From the IMG/VR virus record IMGVR_UViG_3300035180_001778, positions 124,001 to 188,000 of that record: 64,000 bases of DNA; one strand, 5' to 3'. Below the pieces are notes generated by a model. That model was given only the letters and a program-made list of their open reading frames with translations, had not been told where the DNA came from and did not search any database. This document shows positions 13,052-56,832 of this stretch, piece after piece. Within the stretch, counting starts at the first letter, position 1; every line of letters starts with the position of its first letter. Both the position numbers and the translations under genes were made by a program.

Positions 13052-14719
13052 CTACACCGAAGGTGTCCCCAAGGGAAATGACTTCGGGGCACCGTACGTG
13101 AAGTGGGGATCGGTTTGATCGAGGAGATAGGTGGCCCGCACACTGAACGAGAAGCTGTACTCCAGCGTGAACGGGCTCAGGTCGGATTCGGTGACGTTGA
13201 AGGAGTCGAAGGACCCGATGTAGATGATGTTGTCGTAGAAGATGTAGATCGACCCCACAAGGGCGAGATTGGTAGTCTTCTGCGTCTGGGTGGACGTGGC
13301 ATCCGGGAGCCACACGCCCCCGTTGTTGCGGTACAAGAGCCAGAGCGATAGGAAGTTCTGGTAGGAGAGGGAGAAGTTCCGAGCCATGCGAGTGAGCCCG
13401 GGGCTGTTGCCCACGCTCCCAAGGGATCCCCCGTTCGCATCGATCGCGTAGAACCCCGCGAGCTTCCCGGAGCCTTCGACCTTGTCTTGCTGCTCCCCCC
13501 AATGCTCGACGATGGGTCCGTTCCGACCCCAGTTCCCATCGGAGACGACCTTCTCCGAGGAGACCTTGAAGGACGCAGGGTTGACCAACATCCGTAGGGG
13601 AGGCGTGTTGGCCATCTGGTCGATGGCCAGCTTGACTGCTTTGGCAGCGGCTCTCTGCACGTCTTGGAACTTCTGCCCCAAGCCCGACGTATCGAGAGAC
13701 GTGTTCGCAGTCTTCGAGTTCTCCTTGGACGCCACCTGTGCGGAGGCACTACCCGACCCCTGCCACCCCGCAGTGGAGTCCGCGTTGACGGGGTGGGTGT
13801 TTGCATCAATGTCCACCCCTGAGAGCATCTTGTCGAGGTCTACCAAGGCGTACAGATGGAGGCCGTCGCCCCCGACTAGGTCCTTGCCTCCCGCTCGATG
13901 CACCTCCCACGAGCCATCTTCCTGTCGAGTCCACACCCGATCGGATCTGGAGATGCCCCTGTACCCAGCAACATTCTGCCCGCCGCTGATATCCCGTTCT
14001 GTGAAGTACCCAGCTTCGGCAGACCCCGAGGTGATGGTCTCGATGATCGCCATGTGTTGCTGCCCACCCGTGATGTAGAAGATATCCCCGGGTTTGGGGG
14101 TCACTGAGAACTTGCCGAACTTGTCGAGGCGAGCCCCCTTTCGGGCGGCAATCGCCAGGACATCAGCGTTCGCCATGCTCCACTTGTAGGGGTTCGTCAG
14201 CTCCGGCTCATTGAGCCCCAGTTCGCGTAGCCAGCCTCGTACGGTGATCGCACACGAGGCCTGTTCCGAAAGAGCGACTGCCGTTGAAAGAGGATCGATC
14301 GCCGGGTCCGCGAGGAGATTCAGGTAGCGTTCATTTGTCGAGGCATTCGTGCTGAGACCCACATAACTCTGGGCAAGTGCCAGAGCCTTGTCCCGGGCAT
14401 CCTGGTTGAAGCCAGCGTTGGAGCCCCCCGAGGTGCCAGAGCTTGTCCCCGCTGCGGGCGTCCCGAGAATCGACGAAAGAGAGGCCGACCGATCCAGGTT
14501 GCGCCCCGTCACGTTCGCCGAAGGAGGGAGAACCCCGATGATGAAGGGCTTCACATTCTTCGCAGAAAAAGGGATCTGCGAAAGAGGGATGTACTCCGCG
14601 GACAGGTAGTCAGACGTGGTGCTGAGCGAGGAGAAGAACGAGAGCAGGTTGTAGATGTTCGGCGGGTGATAGTCCGCCGTCTGCTCAATCTGCTTCGCGA
14701 TACTGTTCTCGTTTGCCAT
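13052..14719 (-). CDS. Tail tube-initiator-like protein with internal CHAP/NlpC-P60-like domain
   Basis: Likely start MANENS; 'SCAITVRGWL...PKPGDIFYI...HMAIIE' resembles a Cys/His amidase; C-terminus (VNPASF...EHWGEQ...YIGSFDSFNVTESD.SPF) is paralogous to 15321-15968. Confidence 0.6.
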   Translation of the reverse strand: MANENSIAKQIEQTADYHPPNIYNLLSFFSSLSTTSDYLSAEYIPLSQIPFSAKNVKPFIIGVLPPSANVTGRNLDRSASLSSILGTPAAGTSSGTSGGSNAGFNQDARDKALALAQSYVGLSTNASTNERYLNLLADPAIDPLSTAVALSEQASCAITVRGWLRELGLNEPELTNPYKWSMANADVLAIAARKGARLDKFGKFSVTPKPGDIFYITGGQQHMAIIETITSGSAEAGYFTERDISGGQNVAGYRGISRSDRVWTRQEDGSWEVHRAGGKDLVGGDGLHLYALVDLDKMLSGVDIDANTHPVNADSTAGWQGSGSASAQVASKENSKTANTSLDTSGLGQKFQDVQRAAAKAVKLAIDQMANTPPLRMLVNPASFKVSSEKVVSDGNWGRNGPIVEHWGEQQDKVEGSGKLAGFYAIDANGGSLGSVGNSPGLTRMARNFSLSYQNFLSLWLLYRNNGGVWLPDATSTQTQKTTNLALVGSIYIFYDNIIYIGSFDSFNVTESDLSPFTLEYSFSFSVRATYLLDQTDPHFTYGAPKSFPLGTPSV

Positions 14720-14721
14720 GG

Positions 14722-15324
14722 TCAGAACCGTACTGCTTCGAGTACACGACACGCAACAGAAGGAAGAGTCAAAACCTCTCCCTCATAGACTTCGCCACTA
14801 AACATCTCAATTGAATCAGAGCGAACAGCAATTTCAGCGAATGCCTGCTTGTGTCTCCCACACAAGATGCTGAAGGCATCTATATCAACGATGATTTCAT
14901 CACTAGACGCGTGCGCAGAGCACAAGGCACCCCCATTCCAATCCTGCCGAGACTCTGTTGCAAATCCGATCCCAGAAAACCATCGAGCTGTTCTTTCGAC
15001 AGTGCTCCATTGAAGTACCTTGTTCGGCCGACTCAAGACAGAACCCACTTCAGGAAGTGGGTCTTGATGTGTCAACCTACGCCCATAAAACAAGGACACA
15101 GAGGAAGGATTGACGAATGTTTTCAACCATTTGCGGAACTTGACGTCCGCCTTCCAAGCCTTGTAAACCCAGTCCAAAGCAGTTGGACGGCTATTCCCCA
15201 TACAACTGGCAAGACCCACACTGAAATTACGTAGAGAGTCTTTCTCTCGGTCCCCCAAAATGGCAAAGGGGTCCTCCGAGGACCAGAATCTCTTCGCGAC
15301 GCGATCCGTGATTGCCATGGTCAT
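14722..15324 (-). CDS. Putative ADP-ribosyltransferase-fold protein
   Basis: Motifs LFYGRR / QWSTVERTARWF / YEGEVL in ART-like order; lower GC than flanks; N-terminal DRVAKRF tag. Confidence 0.4.
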   Translation of the reverse strand: MTMAITDRVAKRFWSSEDPFAILGDREKDSLRNFSVGLASCMGNSRPTALDWVYKAWKADVKFRKWLKTFVNPSSVSLFYGRRLTHQDPLPEVGSVLSRPNKVLQWSTVERTARWFSGIGFATESRQDWNGGALCSAHASSDEIIVDIDAFSILCGRHKQAFAEIAVRSDSIEMFSGEVYEGEVLTLPSVACRVLEAVRF

Positions 15325-15968
15325 TGCCCCCGAGCAGAGTTTTGACTCTGGAAGAAGGGTCCTCCCATTCGAGGTGCTTGGCCTGTAGGAATCTGGAGCA
15401 AGGTCTCTTCCACCTTGAAAGTCCAGTTCAAGGCGAAGGAGAATGGCGCTGCATCGGTCTCCTCGACGTCGAAGGATCGGAAGGTGCCAATATAGACGCC
15501 TCTATCGAAGAGGAGCATGATGTTGCCCTGGAGAACGATGTTGCCCGCCGGGTCATAGACCGACCCGTTGTTGTGGTAGAGGTCGTAGAGATCCCGGTAG
15601 CGATCCCAGGCAATGGTCTGTTGCCGGACGACGCTGGAGAGCCCCGTGTAGAGATTCATGAAGGCGCCCGTCGAGCCGTCACAGGAGATTTCCTCCAGCT
15701 CGTCTCCCCAGTGTTGCTCGATGTACCCCCCTCGCGTCTGGATCTTCTCGACCTTCTTGTTGTGGGTGAAGGCCATGTTCGCGGGGTTGACGTGGAGAAC
15801 CAGCGCATGGGGGAGCAGCGCCAGGTGACGGTTGAACGGGCTCGTCACCTGGAAGGCCATGGGGATCGACCCCTTGCGCTTCTCCGCTGGATGGCTGTAG
15901 CCAACGTTCTCGCTCGGAGCGTCGAGAATCGGGAGGTCAGTGATGTTGGCGGACGGGATCCGAGGCAT
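15321..15968 (-). CDS. Tail tube initiator / baseplate-tube junction protein (gp48/gp54-like)
   Basis: VNPANM...KIQTRGGYIEQHWGDELEEISCDGST motif; first minus-strand gene after the tape measure. Confidence 0.65.
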   Translation of the reverse strand: MPRIPSANITDLPILDAPSENVGYSHPAEKRKGSIPMAFQVTSPFNRHLALLPHALVLHVNPANMAFTHNKKVEKIQTRGGYIEQHWGDELEEISCDGSTGAFMNLYTGLSSVVRQQTIAWDRYRDLYDLYHNNGSVYDPAGNIVLQGNIMLLFDRGVYIGTFRSFDVEETDAAPFSFALNWTFKVEETLLQIPTGQAPRMGGPFFQSQNSARGQ

Positions 15969-15996
15969 CTACCCCTAGCTGGTGTATAGGTGCCCC

Positions 15997-16194
15997 ATGA
16001 GCGAACGCCTTACACTGTGCCCGGAATGTAAATCTCGTCGGGTGTCAACCGTGAAGGTTTTGAACCCCGAAACCAGCGACATGAATTGCAACGCGGATCT
16101 GAAGTGTGAAGAACCCGCGTGCGGACATCTCTGGGTTGGCCGAGTCACGAGCCCGCATTACAAGAAGCTCCGCGACTCCGGGCGAATCATCTGA
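15997..16194 (+). CDS. Small zinc-ribbon protein
   Basis: CPEC...CEEPACGH; ATG 10 nt after GGTGTA. Confidence 0.65.
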   Translation: MSERLTLCPECKSRRVSTVKVLNPETSDMNCNADLKCEEPACGHLWVGRVTSPHYKKLRDSGRII

Positions 16195-16200
16195 GGACCC

Positions 16201-16440
16201 ATGGATGACGACCTGTATTCCTACTGGTCTCTTTGGGTCTTCCCCCCGCGGCCCAAAGAGACCCCCCACGAGATAATCAGGCGTGCAATCGCAAACTTCG
16301 CGCTGCCCTTGCCTCTGATACGGAGCCGAGAGGCCCCGACCTATGGACGGCGTGGTCCCATAGGTCCTTATGCGGGGGCTCGAAGGACTTTCCTCGTCGA
16401 GGATCTGCCTGACTTCCCGATCATTGATCGAGATCCCTGA
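16201..16440 (+). CDS. Small protein with capsid-like C-terminal peptide
   Basis: GAGGA RBS; ends RRTFLVEDLPDFPIIDRDP. Confidence 0.55.
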   Translation: MDDDLYSYWSLWVFPPRPKETPHEIIRRAIANFALPLPLIRSREAPTYGRRGPIGPYAGARRTFLVEDLPDFPIIDRDP

Positions 16441-19400
16441 TCAGCGGTTCTTCTTCGCGCCTTCGTTCTCGTAGAAGGTGTTCGAGGCCTCTGCTCGAAC
16501 CAACCGTTTGAGATCGCCGCGCAGCTCCAGGACGATCTTCTGCGTCCCCGAACCCCCACCCGCGGGGACGATCTTCTCCCCAACCCCAATCGAAGCCAGG
16601 CCTTCCCCCGGAGCGGGGCGAAGTTGAGCCATGCCGTTGGCCACGGCTGAGACAACGCCTCCTGTGGCGTTCGCCGAGAGCTGGGTGATGGCGGTGTCCG
16701 CTGTGATGCCCTGTCCGAGCTTGTCGGCGAGTGCAGCCCCAAGGCCCCGTCCGGAGATGCCCCCCTGGACAGCCTTGCTCACGGATTCCTGCTTCAGATC
16801 CTTGTAGAGGTAGTACTCGTAGAGCCCCTGACGGAGCGCTTCGAGGAACGAGTCCTCCATCTGCTGTCCCATCTTGTTCTTCAAGAAGGCCTTGTCGATG
16901 ACAATGCCCTGCTTGCGCAGCGTGTCCTGAGCCCCATCGAGACCCTTGATCACATGGTCTTGCTGGCCAGCCGTGGGGGCATCCTTCGGCAGCGGGGGAG
17001 CCCCAGGAGCAGCTCCTCCAGCCGCTCCCGGAGGAAGCGGAGGACCTGACACCCCAGGGGGCATAGCTTGAGGGGGTGCCTCTTGCGGGGCCGGACTGTC
17101 AGGGCTACTCGAAGGAGACGTAGAACCACCCGTCATGGCCTTGAGGTCGGGGAATATCTTGGCCAACTTGGTGGGGTCCATCTCCCAGCCGAGCTTGGCC
17201 ATGATCTTGTCCATGTCATCCTTGCTGAATTTGGACGTATCGATCGACCCGTCGAACCCCACGATACCTGCCTTGCCCTTCTTCTGGTTCATGAACTCTT
17301 GACGAGTGCCGGGGTCCAACTTCAGACGGTCTGCCTCCTTGTTGGCTGCATCGAGCTTGTCCTGTCCTCCGTAGAGTCCGCCTTCCCCCAAAGCATCAAT
17401 GACAGCCCGACGCATCTCTTGAGGGCTTGCGTTTTCCTGCATCTTCCGCTGGGCAGCCTGCCCGCTTTGACCTCCCTTGGTCATCGCGTCCACAATCTGC
17501 TTCATCCCCTGCGACTGCATCAGCTCGCCACGGAACTTGAACTCATCCCCACCAGAAGCTCCCAACGCCTTTTGGGTATCGGAATCCTTGCCCTCGCGGA
17601 CGGTTTTCGAGAGGTCCCGCTGCTTCCTCTTCTCGTCGTTGCCGAAGATTTTGGAGTCGACCAAGGCGTCCCAAATTCCGGTCAACACCGTGTAGATTTG
17701 ATTCATGATGAACTCGGCGACGTTGCCGATCTTGTCCATCAAGCTCGTCTGGAACTTGCCGGTCTCCTTGGCGTAATCGATCTGCTTCGCGCCATCCTTG
17801 AGGGCGTCCTGCTCCGACTGATCCAGGGTCGCCAAGATGTCGTCATAGCCCGCCGTGTCGATATCGGCCGCTGCCACTCCGGCCTTGTCGAGGCGCTTCA
17901 TTGCAGCGGCTTGCTTGTCCCCGCCAGCCTTGAGGTCCGCCTTCAGCTCGTCCCGCTGCTCGTCGATGGCCTCCTCGAACTTGGCCATCTGGGCGAGCTG
18001 GTCCTCACTGATCCCGTTCGCATCCGCAAGCATCTCGGTCCCGAGATCCCCACGCCGGTCCCGGAGCTTCCCCGACCCTCCGATGTTGAGCGCAGACTTC
18101 ATCGACTGAAGGGCTGCGCCAGGGCCGAGGTTGCGTCCCGCCACAGAGGATCCGAAGACCCCCTTCTTGTTGGCTTTGGCGTCCATCCGCATCTCGGAGA
18201 TGGCCTCATGAAGCGTCCCCTGAGCTTCCTTGGAGACCCCCTGCATGAGTTCCTTGATGGGCTTCGACATGAGGTCTTCGCGAGAATACCCAGCCTTCCC
18301 GCCGGCTTCCGCGATCTTCCCACTGACGTCCTTGGACTTACGGTCAAGGTCCTTCTCGACCATGCCGCCCATCTTGCCGCCTCCGAGGAGGTTCGTCTTG
18401 AGACGCTCGACGCGACCCATCCCCTTGAGGGCCTGCGTCGCCGTCTGCATGAACTTCTGGGCGTTCCTTGGGCTCATCACCTTGCCCAAGAGGCCGAGGA
18501 TCTTGACGGCGTCTTCCATCCGAGTGTTGTAGAGAGCCAGGTCCGCGGAGACTCCTCGGATGATCCCGAAGAACTTGTTGCTCGCGATCCCTCCGTCCTC
18601 CGCTGCCCTGCTCATCTGCGTGAAGTTCAGCTCGACGCTCTTGAGCCCCATCCCCATGTCCGTCATCATCTCCGCTTGGAGATTGCCGATGTCAGAGAGG
18701 CTCACGCCAAGATTCCGTGAGTAAGCCACTGCCATCTGGACAGTCGAGCCAAAGCTCTTCGCGTAGCCGGCTGCTTCTTTCGATGACTTCGACGTCGCCT
18801 CGAAGTCATCGTTGAGGCGGCGCAAAGAGACACCCTCGGCTGTGAGGGAGCTGAGGACAGCCTTGTGGGTATCCTTGTTGATACCCCACGACATGTTGTC
18901 GAGACTCGTCGCCTGGTCACGGATCTTCTTGAGGGTGTCCCCGAGTTCTCCTGCTCCGGCATTGACGTTGTTGAAGTTCGAGTAGAGGAAAGAAGCGGAT
19001 CCCGACGTGGCTAGGATTTCCTTGTTGAAGTCTTTCGCCGCTGCCTCTGCGTCCACGAAGAGCTTGACGAGACCCACCATGACGGTGCTCACGACGCCGA
19101 GAAGGGGCCCGAGCTTCGAGACGATGTCGAGGATGGGTGCGAGCCCACCGGCCAGCTTCCCGACCCCCTGCATGGCCCCGCCGCCAGCCACCTGAGCCGC
19201 GCCCCCGAGCTTGCCCATGATGCCGCCACGGGCCATGGACATCTTGCCCTTGGACATCATGGATGCGCCAGCTCGCTCGCCAAACTTGCCGCCGACCTTG
19301 GCAAGCCAAGACCCGCCCTTGAAGACGCCCTCGACGCCCTTCCCCAAGAGCTTCCCGCCAGACTCGAAAGCTCCGGGAAGGTCCTTCGAGATAAGGCGAT

Positions 19401-19878
19401 CGATGGGTTCGTACAGCTCTTGACCAGCTTCCTTCATCGCACCGACGAATTCATCCTTGTCAAAAACGATGCGCGTCTCCAGGTCCTCCTTGACCCGAGT
19501 CATGGTGTCGAGAGCCTTCTCCCGAGCATCCCGCAGCTTCTCCCAGTCCTTGATCTCCTTCTCGACGTTCTTGCGGCTATCCCCAGAAGCGGATGCCAAT
19601 TTACCCCGGCTCCGTTCAAGCTCGTGGTTGATGTCCGCGATCGAACGCTCCAGCTTGTTGTAGGACTTCGTGACGTCCTTGAGCATCGGGATGGCAGTAC
19701 GTCGAACGGTGACGTACTGGTGTGCGAACTTCTCGATGCCCTTGTTGAGCTTCTTCGCGCCCTTGTCGAGGTCGGTAGTTCGCGCCGAGATCGCCTTCTC
19801 CAGGCGGTCCATGTCGCGTTTTGCGTCTTTGGTATCGAGGTCTACTCGAAGCCCAAGAACTTCCAAGCTCGTTGCCAT
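16441..19878 (-). CDS. Tape measure protein
   Basis: 1145 aa, helical and A/G/K/M-rich with a hydrophobic segment; downstream of the tube and chaperones. Confidence 0.8.
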   Translation of the reverse strand: MATSLEVLGLRVDLDTKDAKRDMDRLEKAISARTTDLDKGAKKLNKGIEKFAHQYVTVRRTAIPMLKDVTKSYNKLERSIADINHELERSRGKLASASGDSRKNVEKEIKDWEKLRDAREKALDTMTRVKEDLETRIVFDKDEFVGAMKEAGQELYEPIDRLISKDLPGAFESGGKLLGKGVEGVFKGGSWLAKVGGKFGERAGASMMSKGKMSMARGGIMGKLGGAAQVAGGGAMQGVGKLAGGLAPILDIVSKLGPLLGVVSTVMVGLVKLFVDAEAAAKDFNKEILATSGSASFLYSNFNNVNAGAGELGDTLKKIRDQATSLDNMSWGINKDTHKAVLSSLTAEGVSLRRLNDDFEATSKSSKEAAGYAKSFGSTVQMAVAYSRNLGVSLSDIGNLQAEMMTDMGMGLKSVELNFTQMSRAAEDGGIASNKFFGIIRGVSADLALYNTRMEDAVKILGLLGKVMSPRNAQKFMQTATQALKGMGRVERLKTNLLGGGKMGGMVEKDLDRKSKDVSGKIAEAGGKAGYSREDLMSKPIKELMQGVSKEAQGTLHEAISEMRMDAKANKKGVFGSSVAGRNLGPGAALQSMKSALNIGGSGKLRDRRGDLGTEMLADANGISEDQLAQMAKFEEAIDEQRDELKADLKAGGDKQAAAMKRLDKAGVAAADIDTAGYDDILATLDQSEQDALKDGAKQIDYAKETGKFQTSLMDKIGNVAEFIMNQIYTVLTGIWDALVDSKIFGNDEKRKQRDLSKTVREGKDSDTQKALGASGGDEFKFRGELMQSQGMKQIVDAMTKGGQSGQAAQRKMQENASPQEMRRAVIDALGEGGLYGGQDKLDAANKEADRLKLDPGTRQEFMNQKKGKAGIVGFDGSIDTSKFSKDDMDKIMAKLGWEMDPTKLAKIFPDLKAMTGGSTSPSSSPDSPAPQEAPPQAMPPGVSGPPLPPGAAGGAAPGAPPLPKDAPTAGQQDHVIKGLDGAQDTLRKQGIVIDKAFLKNKMGQQMEDSFLEALRQGLYEYYLYKDLKQESVSKAVQGGISGRGLGAALADKLGQGITADTAITQLSANATGGVVSAVANGMAQLRPAPGEGLASIGVGEKIVPAGGGSGTQKIVLELRGDLKRLVRAEASNTFYENEGAKKNR

Positions 19879-23090: not shown

Positions 23091-23762
23091 TCACCTTTGG
23101 GTGTTGAGCATGTAGAAAATCGTTCGGTCCCTTTTCCGGGAATTACACGACCTACATGAAGGAATGATGTTCTCTGCCGTGTGAGGACCCCCGCGAGAAA
23201 TGGGGATCATGTGGTCCATCGTCAGAGAATCACACTCGACAAGGCAGTAACCGCACTTCTGATCGAATACATATAGAATCTCAAGCCACTCCTCATATTG
23301 AAAGGGAGAGCTTGCATAGATGCTTCTTCGCCGAAGACTTGAAGTCCGAAGGAGATCCTGATTTTCAACGTACCAACGCTGGTAATATGCGCGCACCTTT
23401 TCAGGGTGCGCCTTCATCCAAGACTTGATCCAGCCTTTGGCTTTGGCTTGGTTCTCGGGCTGCTCCAACCAACGTGCATGGTAAAAACGCATCTTTTCAG
23501 GATGTGCCTGTTTCCATTTCTTGCTGTAAGCGAGAATCTTCTCTGGTTCTCGCTTGTACTGGGCTAGCGCACGAACCCTAGCTTGGGGAAGCTCCCGTTC
23601 TCGTTGTAGAGCGAGCTTTTCAGGGTTACGACCACGCCAAGCTGTTGTACGCTGAACGATCACAGCCTTTTTGCAGGATTCGCAACGCAAACGCTTGGGA
23701 GACGATCCGCTTGGCAGATCACCCCCACAACCGATGCATGTACGAACTGCTTCGAGCACCAT
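23091..23762 (-). CDS. HNH homing endonuclease
   Basis: CGYC...TMDHMIPISRGGPHTAENIIPSCRSCNSRK; lower GC. Confidence 0.9.
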   Translation of the reverse strand: MVLEAVRTCIGCGGDLPSGSSPKRLRCESCKKAVIVQRTTAWRGRNPEKLALQRERELPQARVRALAQYKREPEKILAYSKKWKQAHPEKMRFYHARWLEQPENQAKAKGWIKSWMKAHPEKVRAYYQRWYVENQDLLRTSSLRRRSIYASSPFQYEEWLEILYVFDQKCGYCLVECDSLTMDHMIPISRGGPHTAENIIPSCRSCNSRKRDRTIFYMLNTQR

Positions 23763-31329: not shown

Positions 31330-32172
31330 TCAAGGATCAGCTTGATGTACCAACCATGCGCCCTGGGTGGGAGCGCGATCTGTGAAGTTGGCGAGCCTCA
31401 AGAACTCACCCACGTTCTTTTCCAGGAGAAGCTTCTGTCCGAGCATCTGGTCGTAGATAGGCATCGACTCCTTCGAGATAATGCAATACCTCCGCGTGGG
31501 CTCCCCATTCTCAATGAGGTCCACGTTGTGGGCGTACCCCTTCCGAACCCGATAGATTCTACGGTCTTCCCCACGAACGTGGAATGCTCCCGTCGTCATC
31601 AACTCCTCTTGCTGGTCATCTGTGAGGAACTGCTCCAGGAGAACCCGAGATTTGGCGAGAGCTTCGGTCTCCTGTTGTCTCTCCAGCTCCAGAGCTTCGC
31701 GGTTGGCGATCCTCGCCGCGAACATGGCTCGAATCACAGGGTGCAAGCCCTCAAAGTTCTCCCCCCGAGGTTCCCTGCACACTTGGAGGATCAGGTCCTC
31801 AGCCCTCGCGCCATCAAGGGCATAGGCGTTTCGGCAGCTATTCCCAGGCAAAAAACCCAAACCGCAACAAGTCCACAACCCGAGAGGGGGCAAGTCGCAG
31901 ATAGTTCGGATTGAGAAAATAAGGCTCCCATCCACCCCCAAAGCATCAAGGGTGAGAAGCCAGTCAGGCAGAAGTCCGGCGAGATATCGCACGGTGAGGT
32001 CTACGCCGAGGGGAATGATGACGCGAGCTGTGTGGGCTCTTCGAGGCTCCCACCAAGATGTGGGAGGATCCGCTTCGTTGAAGTTGAGGGTGTGGTATCG
32101 CCCTCCAATCTCTGTGTCGTAGATCGGAATCTCACCATCCCCCAAGTGATGTATCAAGAGGGAGGTGATCAT
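31330..32172 (-). CDS. Hypothetical protein, candidate partner of the GG-ending protein
   Basis: Likely start MITSLL; C-terminal 'LLEQFLT..Q...G.FHVRG...YRV...YC...MP.YDQML.QKLLLE..F...AN' domain. Confidence 0.65.
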   Translation of the reverse strand: MITSLLIHHLGDGEIPIYDTEIGGRYHTLNFNEADPPTSWWEPRRAHTARVIIPLGVDLTVRYLAGLLPDWLLTLDALGVDGSLIFSIRTICDLPPLGLWTCCGLGFLPGNSCRNAYALDGARAEDLILQVCREPRGENFEGLHPVIRAMFAARIANREALELERQQETEALAKSRVLLEQFLTDDQQEELMTTGAFHVRGEDRRIYRVRKGYAHNVDLIENGEPTRRYCIISKESMPIYDQMLGQKLLLEKNVGEFLRLANFTDRAPTQGAWLVHQADP

Positions 32173-51696: not shown

Positions 51697-52605
51697 CTAC
51701 ACCGCCGCCGACCCCTGCTCCTCGGGGTACATCAGCGTGAAGAACTTCATCTCCGAGACCTGATTGGGGATCACGTCCCCCGTCGCGAAGACGGCCACCT
51801 GTCCGCGAGGAACCTCCCGCGAGACGTGGATCTGAGCGCCGTGGAAGACCCCCATGATCCCCTTGCGGAGGATGACGGCTTGGCTCTCGATGTCCAGGAC
51901 ATCGCGTCCGTACTTGCGGAGGTCCGCATACTCGTATGCGTTCATGTAGATGTGCTCGACCTTCTTGTCCTCAGACCCATGGGGGGCGAAGACCCTCTCC
52001 GCGTAGGCCTTCAGCACAGCCGCTTTTCGGGCCACAGCATCCGGATGGGGGCCCACCGAAACAACCCCCCCATGGTCGCAGAGGTTCACGAGCTTCGTCC
52101 GGATCAGCTCCGGAGTGATCACAAGGGTGGGGAAGTCTACGTCGTCTGCAAACCCACAGGCAAAGCCCGGAGGAACTTCCTTGGAGAGGAAGACCTGAGC
52201 GTTCCACAAGCTCCCCATGATGCCAGCCCGAAGAAGTTCTCCGTTGTGTTGCGCGTCAAAAGACGCGGAGCATTCGCTCCGCAGAGTCATGTATTCTTCC
52301 ATGTTGAGGTAGATCCGAACAACACGGACATCATTCCGCTCGATATGTGCATAGACCTTGCTGGCCAGAGCCTCCAGAAGCGTCTCCCCCTTGGTCAGAA
52401 GGCCCTTGAGAGCGACGGCCGCGTTTGCGGTCATCACCGCATCCCGGATGTGCCGAATTGCCACCGATTGGTCCTCCCCCGCGGGAGTACACGCGAGAAC
52501 GACCGAGGCGAACGTCTTCGCGGCATCCCGGATCATCTCGTACTTCGGGAGCTGGTCTTCGGTGGGGCGGTGGTACGTGAAGATGTGATTTAGATCGAAT
52601 GCCAT
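51697..52605 (-). CDS. Acb2/Tad1-like hairpin domain fused to two tandem capsid-protein-like repeats
   Basis: N-terminal FTYHRP..DQ..KY..IR..A...P...DQSVA...VMTANAAVA; repeats IYLN..EY..LR...GIMG.LWNAQVFLSKEVP.G and IYMN..EYADLR...GIMG.FHGAQIHVSREVP.G. Confidence 0.65.
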   Translation of the reverse strand: MAFDLNHIFTYHRPTEDQLPKYEMIRDAAKTFASVVLACTPAGEDQSVAIRHIRDAVMTANAAVALKGLLTKGETLLEALASKVYAHIERNDVRVVRIYLNMEEYMTLRSECSASFDAQHNGELLRAGIMGSLWNAQVFLSKEVPPGFACGFADDVDFPTLVITPELIRTKLVNLCDHGGVVSVGPHPDAVARKAAVLKAYAERVFAPHGSEDKKVEHIYMNAYEYADLRKYGRDVLDIESQAVILRKGIMGVFHGAQIHVSREVPRGQVAVFATGDVIPNQVSEMKFFTLMYPEEQGSAAV

Positions 52606-56448: not shown

Positions 56449-56832
56449 TCAGGACTCGGTGACGATGAGCTGGCCGGAGGGGAACTTCACCTGGTCGTTC
56501 GTGAGAACGGACCGGGAAGCCGTGAGGTTCGCGAAGTAGAGAAGGTTGCCCGCTGTCGAGGCATCGAGGAGAGCGAAGGCCACCACCGTCCCCCAGTCCG
56601 CTGTGGCGATGGGGAACACCACGTCGACAGAGCTGGCTGAGGCACCACCGGAAGGGGCAGCGAACGTGGCCGCCTGACGCACATAGGAGCCGCCAGTCAC
56701 CTCCGTCCCACCGCCACCAATGCCCGGGGCCACCGTGTAGAGAGCGACGTAGGACGTCGCCGGGACGGTGAACGCCGTGTTCCGTAGAACCGAGTTCAGA
56801 ACTTGATTGATGAGGTATGTGCTCTTAGGCAT
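56449..56832 (-). CDS. Phage fibre-associated structural protein
   Basis: STYL.N..LN...YVALYT..P...GTEVTGGSYVRQ...WGTV...DASTAGNLL. Confidence 0.8.
   Translation of the reverse strand: MPKSTYLINQVLNSVLRNTAFTVPATSYVALYTVAPGIGGGGTEVTGGSYVRQAATFAAPSGGASASSVDVVFPIATADWGTVVAFALLDASTAGNLLYFANLTASRSVLTNDQVKFPSGQLIVTES

What the first reader, a model, noticed from the sequence alone, without database searches (positions are those of the whole stretch)
16201..16440. Mini-protein carrying a capsid N-terminal-like peptide
Seen: an opposite-strand two-gene insert in the tail operon whose second ORF ends ARRTFLVEDLPDFPIIDRDP. From memory this resembles the 'RKTFLVEQLPDGALPIYDKDP' segment of capsid proteins of related phages. 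With 51697-52605 and 32110-32160, the phage may carry several stand-alone capsid fragments acting as decoys or assembly modulators (inference).
Basis: inference. Interest (0 to 1): 0.6.

Follow-up and report, generated by a model that had tools for sequence, protein, structure and literature searches.

The report
Mini-protein ending in a capsid-protein peptide
A small, unannotated but conserved gene in a huge phage ends in a diverged copy of a short stretch near the start of the phage's own major capsid protein, and related huge phages hold several other small proteins built the same way; what they do is still unknown.

Summary
Window 16201-16440 (+) is a 79-codon ORF ending ARRTFLVEDLPDFPIIDRDP. 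It lies with a 65-70 aa zinc-ribbon-like ORF on the opposite strand, in the 472-bp gap between two minus-strand virion genes.

The window belongs to a 350-kb phage record. Its major capsid protein (MCP, 293 aa, related to phage G gp27) lies outside the window and holds GRKTFLVEQLPDGALPIYDKDP at residues 45-66. The match between ORF2 residues 47-79 and MCP 32-66 is beyond chance in pairwise, shuffle and profile tests in both directions.

ORF2 behaves as a real gene. A sister phage holds an orthologue at the same site (70% nt, 61% aa identity). Only this frame is open in both, and dN/dS is 0.37, with both ends under purifying selection.

ORF2 is modular: a 20-aa leader shared with two small fibre-like proteins, a variable linker, and the MCP-like tail. 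An independent family of 77-158 aa zinc-knuckle proteins in related phages also ends in this peptide. Larger proteins carry it internally.

32110-32160 is not supported.

The function is untested. I favour mimicry of the MCP N-arm, either as an immune decoy or as a capsid tag.

The parts
16201..16440 (+). ORF2: 79-aa mini-protein gene. Gene callers did not record it.
   Evidence: ORF listing and translation. Orthologue at L004:3733-3972:-, 61% aa and 70% nt identity, with only this frame open in both; dN/dS 0.37. The exact sequence is absent from the 15-billion-protein collection.
16201..16266 (+). Leader module, codons 1-22 (MDDDLYSYWSLWVFPPRPKETP).
   Evidence: pN 0.08 against pS 0.49. The same N-terminal motif heads two other small proteins of sister phage G002: L108:1024-1449 (PF23140 Gp80-like fibre monomer) and L109:936-1325. 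It occurs only in G000, G001 and G002.
16267..16338 (+). Variable linker, codons 23-46. It includes a predicted helix (residues 22-33) that aligns weakly with the MCP N-terminal helix.
   Evidence: Over codons 23-56, pN is 0.41 against pS 0.48, close to neutral. AF2 predicts helices 5-11 and 22-33 and coil elsewhere, at pLDDT 57. The BLASTP alignment reaches back to residue 19.
16339..16437 (+). MCP-like tail, codons 47-79. It is a diverged copy of MCP residues 32-66 (end of the N-arm, first P-domain strand, start of the E-loop).
   Evidence: Similarity tests. Codons 57-78 show pN 0.16 against pS 0.50. DNA identity to the MCP segment is 45 of 66 nt, so this is not a recent copy.
15997..16194 (+). 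ORF1: 65-aa zinc-ribbon-like protein (CPEC...C...C), or 70 aa from the GTG at 15982. It is a 204-nt cassette absent from the sister phage.
   Evidence: In L004, ORF2 begins at the very ATG that begins ORF1 here, and CCCATG flanks the cassette on both sides. PHROG hits are weak only.
16193..16197 (+). GAGGA Shine-Dalgarno-like site. It overlaps the ORF1 stop and lies 3 nt before the ORF2 ATG, so translational coupling is likely.
   Evidence: Read from the sequence.
15969..15996 (+). 28-nt divergent spacer shared by the start of the tube-initiator-like gene and the first cassette ORF. The ATG at 15997 is the conserved entry point of the cassette site.
   Evidence: The spacer is conserved between the window and L004. 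Metagenome contigs continue behind this ATG with ORF2 directly (X6) or with a different sequence (X7).
15321..15968 (-). Flanking virion gene, tail-tube-initiator-like.
   Evidence: PF23980 E 0.005 (below the cut-off) and phrog_1011 'virion structural protein' E 3e-4. 98% aa identity to the sister phage, pS 0.20, pN 0.010.
16441..19878 (-). Flanking 1145-aa gene. It is called tape-measure-like from its size, composition and position only.
   Evidence: No family hit. C-terminus pS 0.30, pN 0.02-0.04 against the sister phage. In more distant relatives it abuts the next gene with no gap.
51697..52605 (-). P0001: Acb2/Tad1 hairpin domain (aa 10-65) followed by two tandem copies of MCP residues about 166-254 (aa 79-167 and 187-274).
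   Evidence: It is present only in G000, G001 and G002, with a shorter relative in G005.

Best explanation
ORF2 is a genuine, lineage-restricted accessory gene, probably translated in tandem with ORF1. It encodes a largely unstructured, modular mini-protein: a 20-aa leader, a variable linker, and a C-terminal tail that is a diverged copy of MCP residues about 33-66. That MCP stretch is the most invariant part of the protein and covers the end of the N-arm, the first P-domain strand and the start of the E-loop.

I propose that it works by molecular mimicry. The tail presents, in soluble form, the segment that newly made, unassembled MCP exposes. It thereby occupies a factor that recognises this segment.

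Because the gene is an accessory, fast-evolving gene in a cassette hot spot, I take that factor to be most likely a host immune sensor of the conserved MCP. The mini-protein would then be a non-activating decoy or antagonist.

Shown: the gene is conserved and under selection, the tail is homologous to the MCP segment, the protein is modular, and the same design recurs in related phages. Inferred: translation, binding, the identity of the partner, and the direction of the effect.
For: Gene reality:
- The orthologue at the same site keeps one open frame through 30% nucleotide divergence.
- Third-position changes outnumber first- and second-position changes (34 against 19 and 18).
- dN/dS is 0.37. 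The leader and the tail are under purifying selection (pN 0.08 and 0.16 against pS 0.5).

Homology to the MCP.

Recurrence of the design:
- The P0129-P0136 family and G008 L119:672-956:- (77-158 aa) carry a CCCH knuckle, then APPLRRGIDYQAVGRKTFLVxDLPD, then a stop within 2-8 residues.
- G008 L118:416-1024 carries a stretch 84% identical to MCP 41-71.
- Proteins of 250-373 aa with an internal copy of MCP 1-70 occur in 7 records, including G000.

Accessory or conflict-type character:
- Relatives whose MCP is >=90% identical lack the insert, so capsid building does not need it.
- The site has at least four states among relatives.
- pN is 0.24, against 0.01-0.04 in the flanks.
- GC3 is 0.62 and the codon score -0.03, like the HNH gene and unlike core genes at 0.75-0.85.
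- The P0131 homologue lies among TnpB, resolvase and GIY-YIG genes.
- The same lineage fuses MCP pieces to an Acb2/Tad1 hairpin domain.

From established knowledge: MCPs are known triggers of CapRel, CBASS and Pycsar escape loci, and of Lit through the Gol peptide of T4 gp23.
Against: - There is no evidence of transcription or translation; no RNA run holds the locus.
- Gene callers did not record ORF2.
- No anti-defence domain is found in ORF2.
- An MCP-derived peptide would be expected to activate a sensor, as Gol activates Lit, rather than block it.
- The leader is shared with small fibre-monomer-like proteins, which points to the virion.
- The copied strand is intramolecular in the HK97 fold, so it is unclear what would bind it in isolation.
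- The complex prediction with the MCP gave no answer.
- Only two or three orthologues exist, so the selection statistics rest on one pair.
Confidence: 0.3

Rival explanations
1. Capsid tag or assembly partner. The MCP-derived peptide, at the extreme C-terminus of several unrelated small proteins, is a capsid-targeting or co-assembly signal. It would bind what the MCP N-arm binds (a neighbouring MCP, the scaffold or the prohead protease). The small proteins would then be carried into, or act on, the procapsid, possibly as injected accessory cargo.
For: - Three independent architectures all stop a few residues after the peptide.
- Larger paralogues keep the whole N-helix plus strand.
- The ORF2 leader is shared with Gp80-like fibre monomers.
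- ORF2 lies in a virion gene block.
- Known precedents, from established knowledge, are encapsulin C-terminal cargo peptides, the T4 capsid targeting sequence (IPI* is both packaged and anti-restriction), and the C-terminal tail of the HK97 protease.
Against: - Most relatives with a near-identical MCP lack ORF2.
- ORF2 is on the opposite strand to the late genes and has atypical codon usage.
- The mini-protein relatives sit in accessory regions with mobile genes.
- The best-conserved part (MCP 33-56) is an intramolecular strand, not the N-helix expected to meet the scaffold.
- The complex prediction was uninformative.
Confidence: 0.27
2. Young or decaying chimeric ORF without a function of its own. 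Recombination at a cassette hot spot joined a leader fragment to a piece of an MCP-peptide gene. The ORF persists in one narrow lineage by chance or under weak constraint.
For: - Only G000, G001 and G002 carry it.
- There are no homologues in 1.8 billion representative proteins or in the word search.
- The linker evolves neutrally.
- Gene callers did not record it.
- The fold confidence is low.
- The site turns over quickly.
Against: - Both ends are under purifying selection. Observed synonymous against non-synonymous differences are 28.5 and 42.5, against about 18 and 53 expected if neutral.
- The frame stays open with no internal indel through 30% divergence, while the other five frames carry stops.
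- The same peptide-at-the-end design recurs independently.
Confidence: 0.2
3. Leader-driven function. The conserved N-terminal leader, shared with fibre-monomer-like proteins, docks the protein to a virion or tail site. The MCP-like tail is incidental baggage.
For: The leader is the most constrained part (pN 0.08). It heads two Gp80-like small proteins in G002.
Against: The tail is also constrained (pN 0.16). The tail recurs without the leader in other families. The leader-bearing genes of G002 lie in a mixed accessory region, not in a fibre module.
Confidence: 0.1
4. Chance resemblance in a non-coding gap.
For: ORFs of about 80 codons are not rare at 60% G+C, at roughly 7% per frame by my estimate.
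Against: All the similarity and selection tests above.
Confidence: 0.03

Closest known systems
Phage G gp27-type HK97-fold major capsid protein (PDB 6wkk; phrog_2522; PF05065)
   Same: The last ~33 residues of ORF2 are homologous to residues 32-66 of this genome's MCP. That MCP matches gp27 at E 1.5e-62 and phrog_2522 at E 6e-52.
   Different: ORF2 has no E-loop, spine helix, A-domain or the rest of the P-domain. It is 79 aa against 293 and cannot form the fold.
Megaphage CCCH mini-proteins ending in the MCP peptide (P0129-P0136; G006 L122:381-707:+; G008 L119:672-956:-); unnamed 'hypothetical proteins'
   Same: Small size, and the ...APP.RRG..(D)Y....R(K/R)TFLV..LPD motif followed by a stop within a few residues. 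They occur in accessory positions of phages with the same MCP.
   Different: ORF2 lacks the CMRExCG...CxxH knuckle and has the leader and linker instead. Similarity is confined to the peptide (E 0.002-0.03). Common descent against independent capture is unresolved.
Gol peptide of T4 gp23, sensed by the Lit protease (established knowledge)
   Same: A short stretch near the N-terminus of an HK97-fold MCP acts on its own as a recognisable unit.
   Different: Gol is part of the MCP, not a separate gene, and it activates the defence. No sequence relation was tested or is claimed.
C-terminal or N-terminal capsid-loading peptides: encapsulin cargo-loading peptides, the T4 capsid targeting sequence, the HK97 protease tail (established knowledge)
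   Same: A short terminal peptide on otherwise unrelated small proteins, associated with an HK97-fold shell.
   Different: Those peptides are not copies of the shell protein itself. Binding could not be tested here.
Acb2/Tad1 sponge proteins (PF24729), relevant to companion P0001 only
   Same: P0001 holds the hairpin domain above Pfam's cut-off.
   Different: ORF2 has no such domain. P0001 adds two MCP A/P-domain segments not described for Acb2 or Tad1 in the papers I searched.

Membership tests
HK97-fold major capsid protein (PF05065 / phrog_2522) | Match to the family profile over the full fold (about 280 aa: E-loop, P-domain, A-domain) | tested here: not met
   No Pfam or PHROG hit for ORF2. 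Similarity covers MCP residues 7/32-66 only.
HK97-fold major capsid protein (PF05065 / phrog_2522) | Significant sequence homology to the N-arm and first P-domain strand | tested here: met
Megaphage CCCH mini-proteins with a C-terminal MCP peptide (P0129 family) | C-terminal ...R(K/R)TFLV..LPD peptide followed within a few residues by the stop; length under about 160 aa | tested here: met
   Alignment A6. ORF2 ends 8 residues after LPD.
Megaphage CCCH mini-proteins with a C-terminal MCP peptide (P0129 family) | CMRExCG...SVLCxxHTEEV zinc-knuckle motif upstream of the peptide | tested here: not met
   ORF2 has no Cys or His motif. The neighbouring ORF1 has a Cys motif but no significant similarity to the family.
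Capsid-loading or cargo peptides (encapsulin CLP-like) | The peptide binds the shell protein | tested here: inconclusive
   Complex prediction of MCP with ORF2 returned no answer.
Known anti-defence families (Acb2/Tad1 and others in Pfam and PHROGs) | Profile match | tested here: not met
   No hit for ORF2. The companion P0001 does match PF24729.
Expressed protein-coding gene | Transcript or peptide evidence | not testable with these tools
   No RNA run holds the locus. Only comparative evidence is available.

The most novel reading that the evidence does not exclude
Huge phages with the phage-G-type capsid protein have repeatedly copied the most invariant 25-35 residues of that protein onto the C-termini of small accessory proteins: ORF2, the CCCH mini-proteins and others. 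They have also fused other MCP pieces to an Acb2/Tad1-type domain. Together these would form a new class of counter-defence proteins that mimic the phage's own capsid 'pattern' to blind host receptors that sense it. Alternatively, they would be a self-derived address tag that loads accessory cargo into the capsid.
Probability: 0.25. Interest if true: 0.85.

Novelty: new variant of a known kind. Interest (0 to 1): 0.6.

Why it matters
This MCP is extraordinarily conserved. The 120 best of 2076 relatives are 84-95% identical, on contigs up to 620 kb. That makes it an obvious target for host sensing and a fixed point in assembly.

Finding that its most invariant segment has been copied onto several unrelated small proteins gives a concrete and testable handle. 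Either it marks an immune epitope and its decoys, or it marks a self-derived capsid address tag.

It also shows that an ORF missed by gene callers in a 'tail operon' gap is a selected gene, and that this gap is a cassette hot spot.

Tried and rejected
- Word search for ORF2 homologues found none.
- The full-library profile search with the two ORF2 orthologues gave three hits. All were tandem-repeat proteins that score by summed repeats, so I rejected them as spurious.
- ESM Atlas gave no usable hit.
- Pfam and PHROGs gave nothing for ORF2.
- blastn of the locus against GenBank phages found no match.
- tblastn of MCP 1-75 against GenBank phages found one place each in phage G, Tunturi_5 and one uncultured phage. 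No extra copies exist there at E <= 1e-3.
- Complex prediction of MCP with ORF2 gave a score of 0.00 and a verdict of 'no answer'. This is no evidence either way.
- The AF2 model of the MCP from a shallow alignment was poor (pLDDT 41) and could not be used to map the segment. The mapping to HK97 elements therefore rests on family knowledge.
- The AF2 model of ORF2 has low confidence.
- Synteny of the G008 mini-protein with the ORF2 site is rejected.
- Literature searches for MCP decoys or fragments, Acb2-capsid fusions and phage G found no description of such proteins.
- No alternative genetic code was used.

Full report
**Where the window lies.** The window is bases 124001-188000 of a 350,469-bp IMG/VR virus record (G000, about 60% G+C, judged 73% complete). 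It is a jumbo phage from sediment and microbial-mat metagenomes. Nearly all genes in the window are on the minus strand.

**The locus.**
- Minus-strand gene 16441-19878 encodes 1145 aa. It has no family hit and is called tape-measure-like only from size, composition and position.
- Minus-strand gene 15321-15968 encodes 215 aa. It gives weak hits to PF23980 'tail tube initiator' (E 0.005, below the cut-off) and phrog_1011 'virion structural protein' (E 3e-4).
- These two genes are separated by 472 bp.
- Two plus-strand ORFs fill the gap exactly. ORF1 (15997-16194, or from the GTG at 15982) has a CPEC...C...C zinc-ribbon-like pattern.
- A GAGGA overlaps the ORF1 stop, 3 nt before the ORF2 ATG.
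- The ORF2 stop abuts the stop of the 1145-aa gene.

**The capsid protein.**
- The MCP is not in the window. A six-frame search of the whole record with ORF2 found one hit, the frame at G000 190472-191368 (-), which holds AVGRKTFLVEQLPDGALPIYDKDP.
- That ORF (L002:4469-5350:-, P0003, 293 aa) is the major capsid protein. It matches phrog_2522 'major head protein' at E 6e-52 and PDB 6wkk (phage G gp27) at E 1.5e-62. Its PF05065 hit is weak.
- It sits next to a protease-like gene, a Gln-rich putative scaffold and a possible decoration gene.
- The protein is extremely conserved. The search returned 2076 relatives, and the 120 best are 84-95% identical.

**Is the resemblance real?**
- BLASTP aligns ORF2 19-79 with MCP 7-66 (40% identity, E 3e-6). 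The sister orthologue aligns at 49-78 against 34-65 (53% identity, E 6e-8).
- None of 5000 composition-preserving shuffles reached the observed scores. Gumbel p is 7e-6 and 1e-7, which survives correction for my rough estimate of 450 genes in this genome.
- A two-row ORF2 profile finds the MCP N-terminus in all 20 related jumbo-phage records, E 1e-5 to 1e-7 per genome.
- A profile of MCP 1-75 plus paralogues finds ORF2 at E 2.3e-5 and its orthologue at 2.3e-7.
- hhalign gives 91.6% probability, E 8e-7, for ORF2 47-78 against MCP 32-65.
- At the DNA level the segment is 45 of 66 nt identical, so this is an old or selected similarity, not a fresh duplication.
- By analogy with HK97 gp5 (family knowledge, not tested here), the copied stretch is the end of the N-arm, the first P-domain strand and the first residues of the E-loop. 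It is also the most invariant part of the MCP alignment.

**Is ORF2 a gene?**
- IMGVR_UViG_3300035181_001045 carries an identical copy. IMGVR_UViG_3300020122_000238 (L004) carries an orthologue at the same site and in the same orientation.
- Identity to the L004 copy is 70% nt and 61% aa, while the flanks are 89-94% nt identical.
- Only this frame is open in both phages. Differences fall 19, 18 and 34 on codon positions 1, 2 and 3, and Nei-Gojobori dN/dS is 0.37.
- By segment, codons 1-22 show pN 0.08 against pS 0.49, codons 23-56 show 0.41 against 0.48, and codons 57-78 show 0.16 against 0.50.
- In the flanks, the tube-initiator-like gene shows pS 0.20 and pN 0.010, and the C-terminus of the 1145-aa gene shows pS 0.30 and pN 0.02-0.04.
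- ORF2 is therefore coding and constrained at both ends, yet it evolves far faster than its neighbours.
- Its GC3 (0.62) and codon score (-0.03) resemble those of the HNH gene and other accessory genes, not core genes at 0.75-0.85.
- Neither ORF1 nor ORF2 is on record as a called protein.
- No RNA run holds the locus, so translation remains inferred.

**A cassette hot spot.**
- More distant relatives (61-67% identical neighbour gene) have no gap, because the long gene abuts the next one. One relative, L005, has an opposite-strand DNA methyltransferase at the site.
- In L004, ORF2 starts at the very ATG that starts ORF1 in the window. ORF1 is therefore a 204-nt cassette, flanked by CCCATG on both sides.
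- One metagenome (X6) shows both forms in its contigs. Another (X7) shows a different sequence behind the same ATG.
- The adjacent 200-aa gene 14722-15324, which has low GC3, is also missing from L004.

**ORF2 is modular.**
- The N-terminal motif MDDDLxxYWxLxV(F/L)PPRP also heads two small proteins of the sister phage G002. L108:1024-1449 (141 aa) matches the PF23140 Gp80-like small fibre monomer at E 4e-13. L109:936-1325 (129 aa) is weakly related to it.
- The motif is confined to G000, G001 and G002.
- Those two genes lie in a mixed accessory region.
- Gp80-type proteins are tail-fibre monomers (PMC13730344).
- The window's own Gp80-like gene (56449-56832) lacks the leader.
- AF2 predicts only two short helices (5-11 and 22-33) and coil elsewhere, at low confidence.

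**The same peptide elsewhere.**
- Profile searches of 21 related records found extra, non-MCP copies of the MCP N-terminal segment in 10 of them.
- Proteins of 250-373 aa carry an internal copy of MCP about 1-70. In G000 this is L106:4066-4764:-, outside the window.
- A 202-aa Cys-rich protein in G008 carries a stretch 84% identical to MCP 41-71.
- A family of called genes of 77-158 aa (P0129-P0136, G006, G008) carries a CMRExCG...SVLCxxHTEEV knuckle, then RGEAKAPPLRRGIDYQAVGRKTFLVxDLPD, then a stop 2-8 residues later in all but two members.
- One member of that family lies among TnpB, resolvase and GIY-YIG genes.
- ORF2 shares with this family only the peptide and the habit of ending just after it.
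- Phage G and Tunturiibacter phage Tunturi_5, the cultured relatives of this MCP type, show no extra copy.

- 51697-52605 (P0001) is confirmed and striking. It has an Acb2/Tad1 hairpin domain (PF24729, E 7e-13, 49 bits against a cut-off of 27) followed by two tandem copies of MCP residues about 166-254 (E 2e-21 and 3e-15). It is restricted to the same sub-lineage.
- 32110-32160 is not supported.

**Mechanism.** What is shown:
- A selected small gene carries a diverged MCP segment at its C-terminus.
- That design recurs in related phages.

The rest is inference. The common denominator is mimicry of the MCP N-arm segment. Two readings are about equally likely.

Evidence for an immune decoy or antagonist (my slight preference, 0.30):
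- ORF2 and the mini-proteins behave like accessory, conflict-type genes: patchy, fast-evolving, in hot spots, with atypical codons.
- Relatives with the same MCP lack them.
- The same lineage links MCP pieces to a sponge-type domain.

Evidence for a capsid-targeting or assembly tag (0.27):
- The peptide sits at the extreme C-terminus in several unrelated families.
- The leader is shared with fibre-like proteins.
- The larger paralogues keep the whole N-terminal segment.
- Encapsulin and T4 targeting peptides are precedents.

A functionless young chimera (0.20) is weakened by the selection pattern. The one complex prediction allowed gave no answer and counts for nothing.

**Novelty and verdict.** I found no description of MCP-peptide mini-proteins in the papers searched. 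I rate this as a new variant of a known kind, namely co-option of a gene fragment for molecular mimicry.

Noticed in passing
window 51697-52605 (-): A 302-aa protein with an Acb2/Tad1 hairpin domain (PF24729, above the cut-off) fused to two tandem copies of MCP residues about 166-254. It occurs only in G000, G001 and G002, with a 174-aa one-repeat relative in G005. It is a possible link between cyclic-nucleotide sponge proteins and capsid sensing.
   Followed up: partly
L106:4066-4764:- (G000 296066-296764, outside the window); also L096:1177-1932:-, L103:1195-2070:-, L123:553-1674:+: A patchy family of 250-373 aa proteins with an internal copy of the MCP N-terminal 60-70 residues, between unrelated N- and C-terminal regions. 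They match phrog_2522 only over profile positions 37-108.
   Followed up: partly
L002:4066-4413:- (G000 190066-190413, just downstream of the MCP gene): A 115-aa ORF whose first 80 residues weakly resemble the MCP N-terminal helix region (BLASTP E 6e-6; profile E 4e-4).
   Followed up: no
window 14722-15324 (-): A 200-aa gene with low GC3 (0.50) and a poor codon score. It is absent from the sister phage L004, so it is a second indel beside the ORF1/ORF2 site.
   Followed up: partly
window 23091-23762 (-): An HNH endonuclease (PF01844, E 2e-13) with atypical codon usage, inside the virion gene block.
   Followed up: no
L005:43-1656 (-), the relative IMGVR_UViG_3300015607_005107: At the equivalent position upstream of the tube-initiator-like gene, this relative has an opposite-strand DNA methyltransferase (DPPF motif). 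It appears split into two ORFs.
   Followed up: no
window 15997-16000, in metagenome run X7: A contig continues behind the conserved ATG with a sequence unlike ORF1 or ORF2 (CGATCGAAATTCTCGCCC...). This is a further cassette state at the site.
   Followed up: no
window 56449-56832 (-): A full-length Gp80-like small fibre monomer (PF23140, E 1e-42) without the ORF2-type leader. The sister phage G002 has two divergent leader-bearing copies in an accessory region.
   Followed up: partly
L002:4469-5350:- (the MCP): The MCP is 84-95% identical across the 120 best of 2076 relatives, on contigs up to 620 kb. The neighbouring tail-module protein drops to 61-75% identity in more distant relatives. This is unusually strong conservation for a phage capsid protein.
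   Followed up: no
window 13052-14752 (-): A 566-aa protein with a weak CHAP-domain hit (E 1e-3, below the cut-off). It may be a virion-associated peptidoglycan hydrolase.
   Followed up: no
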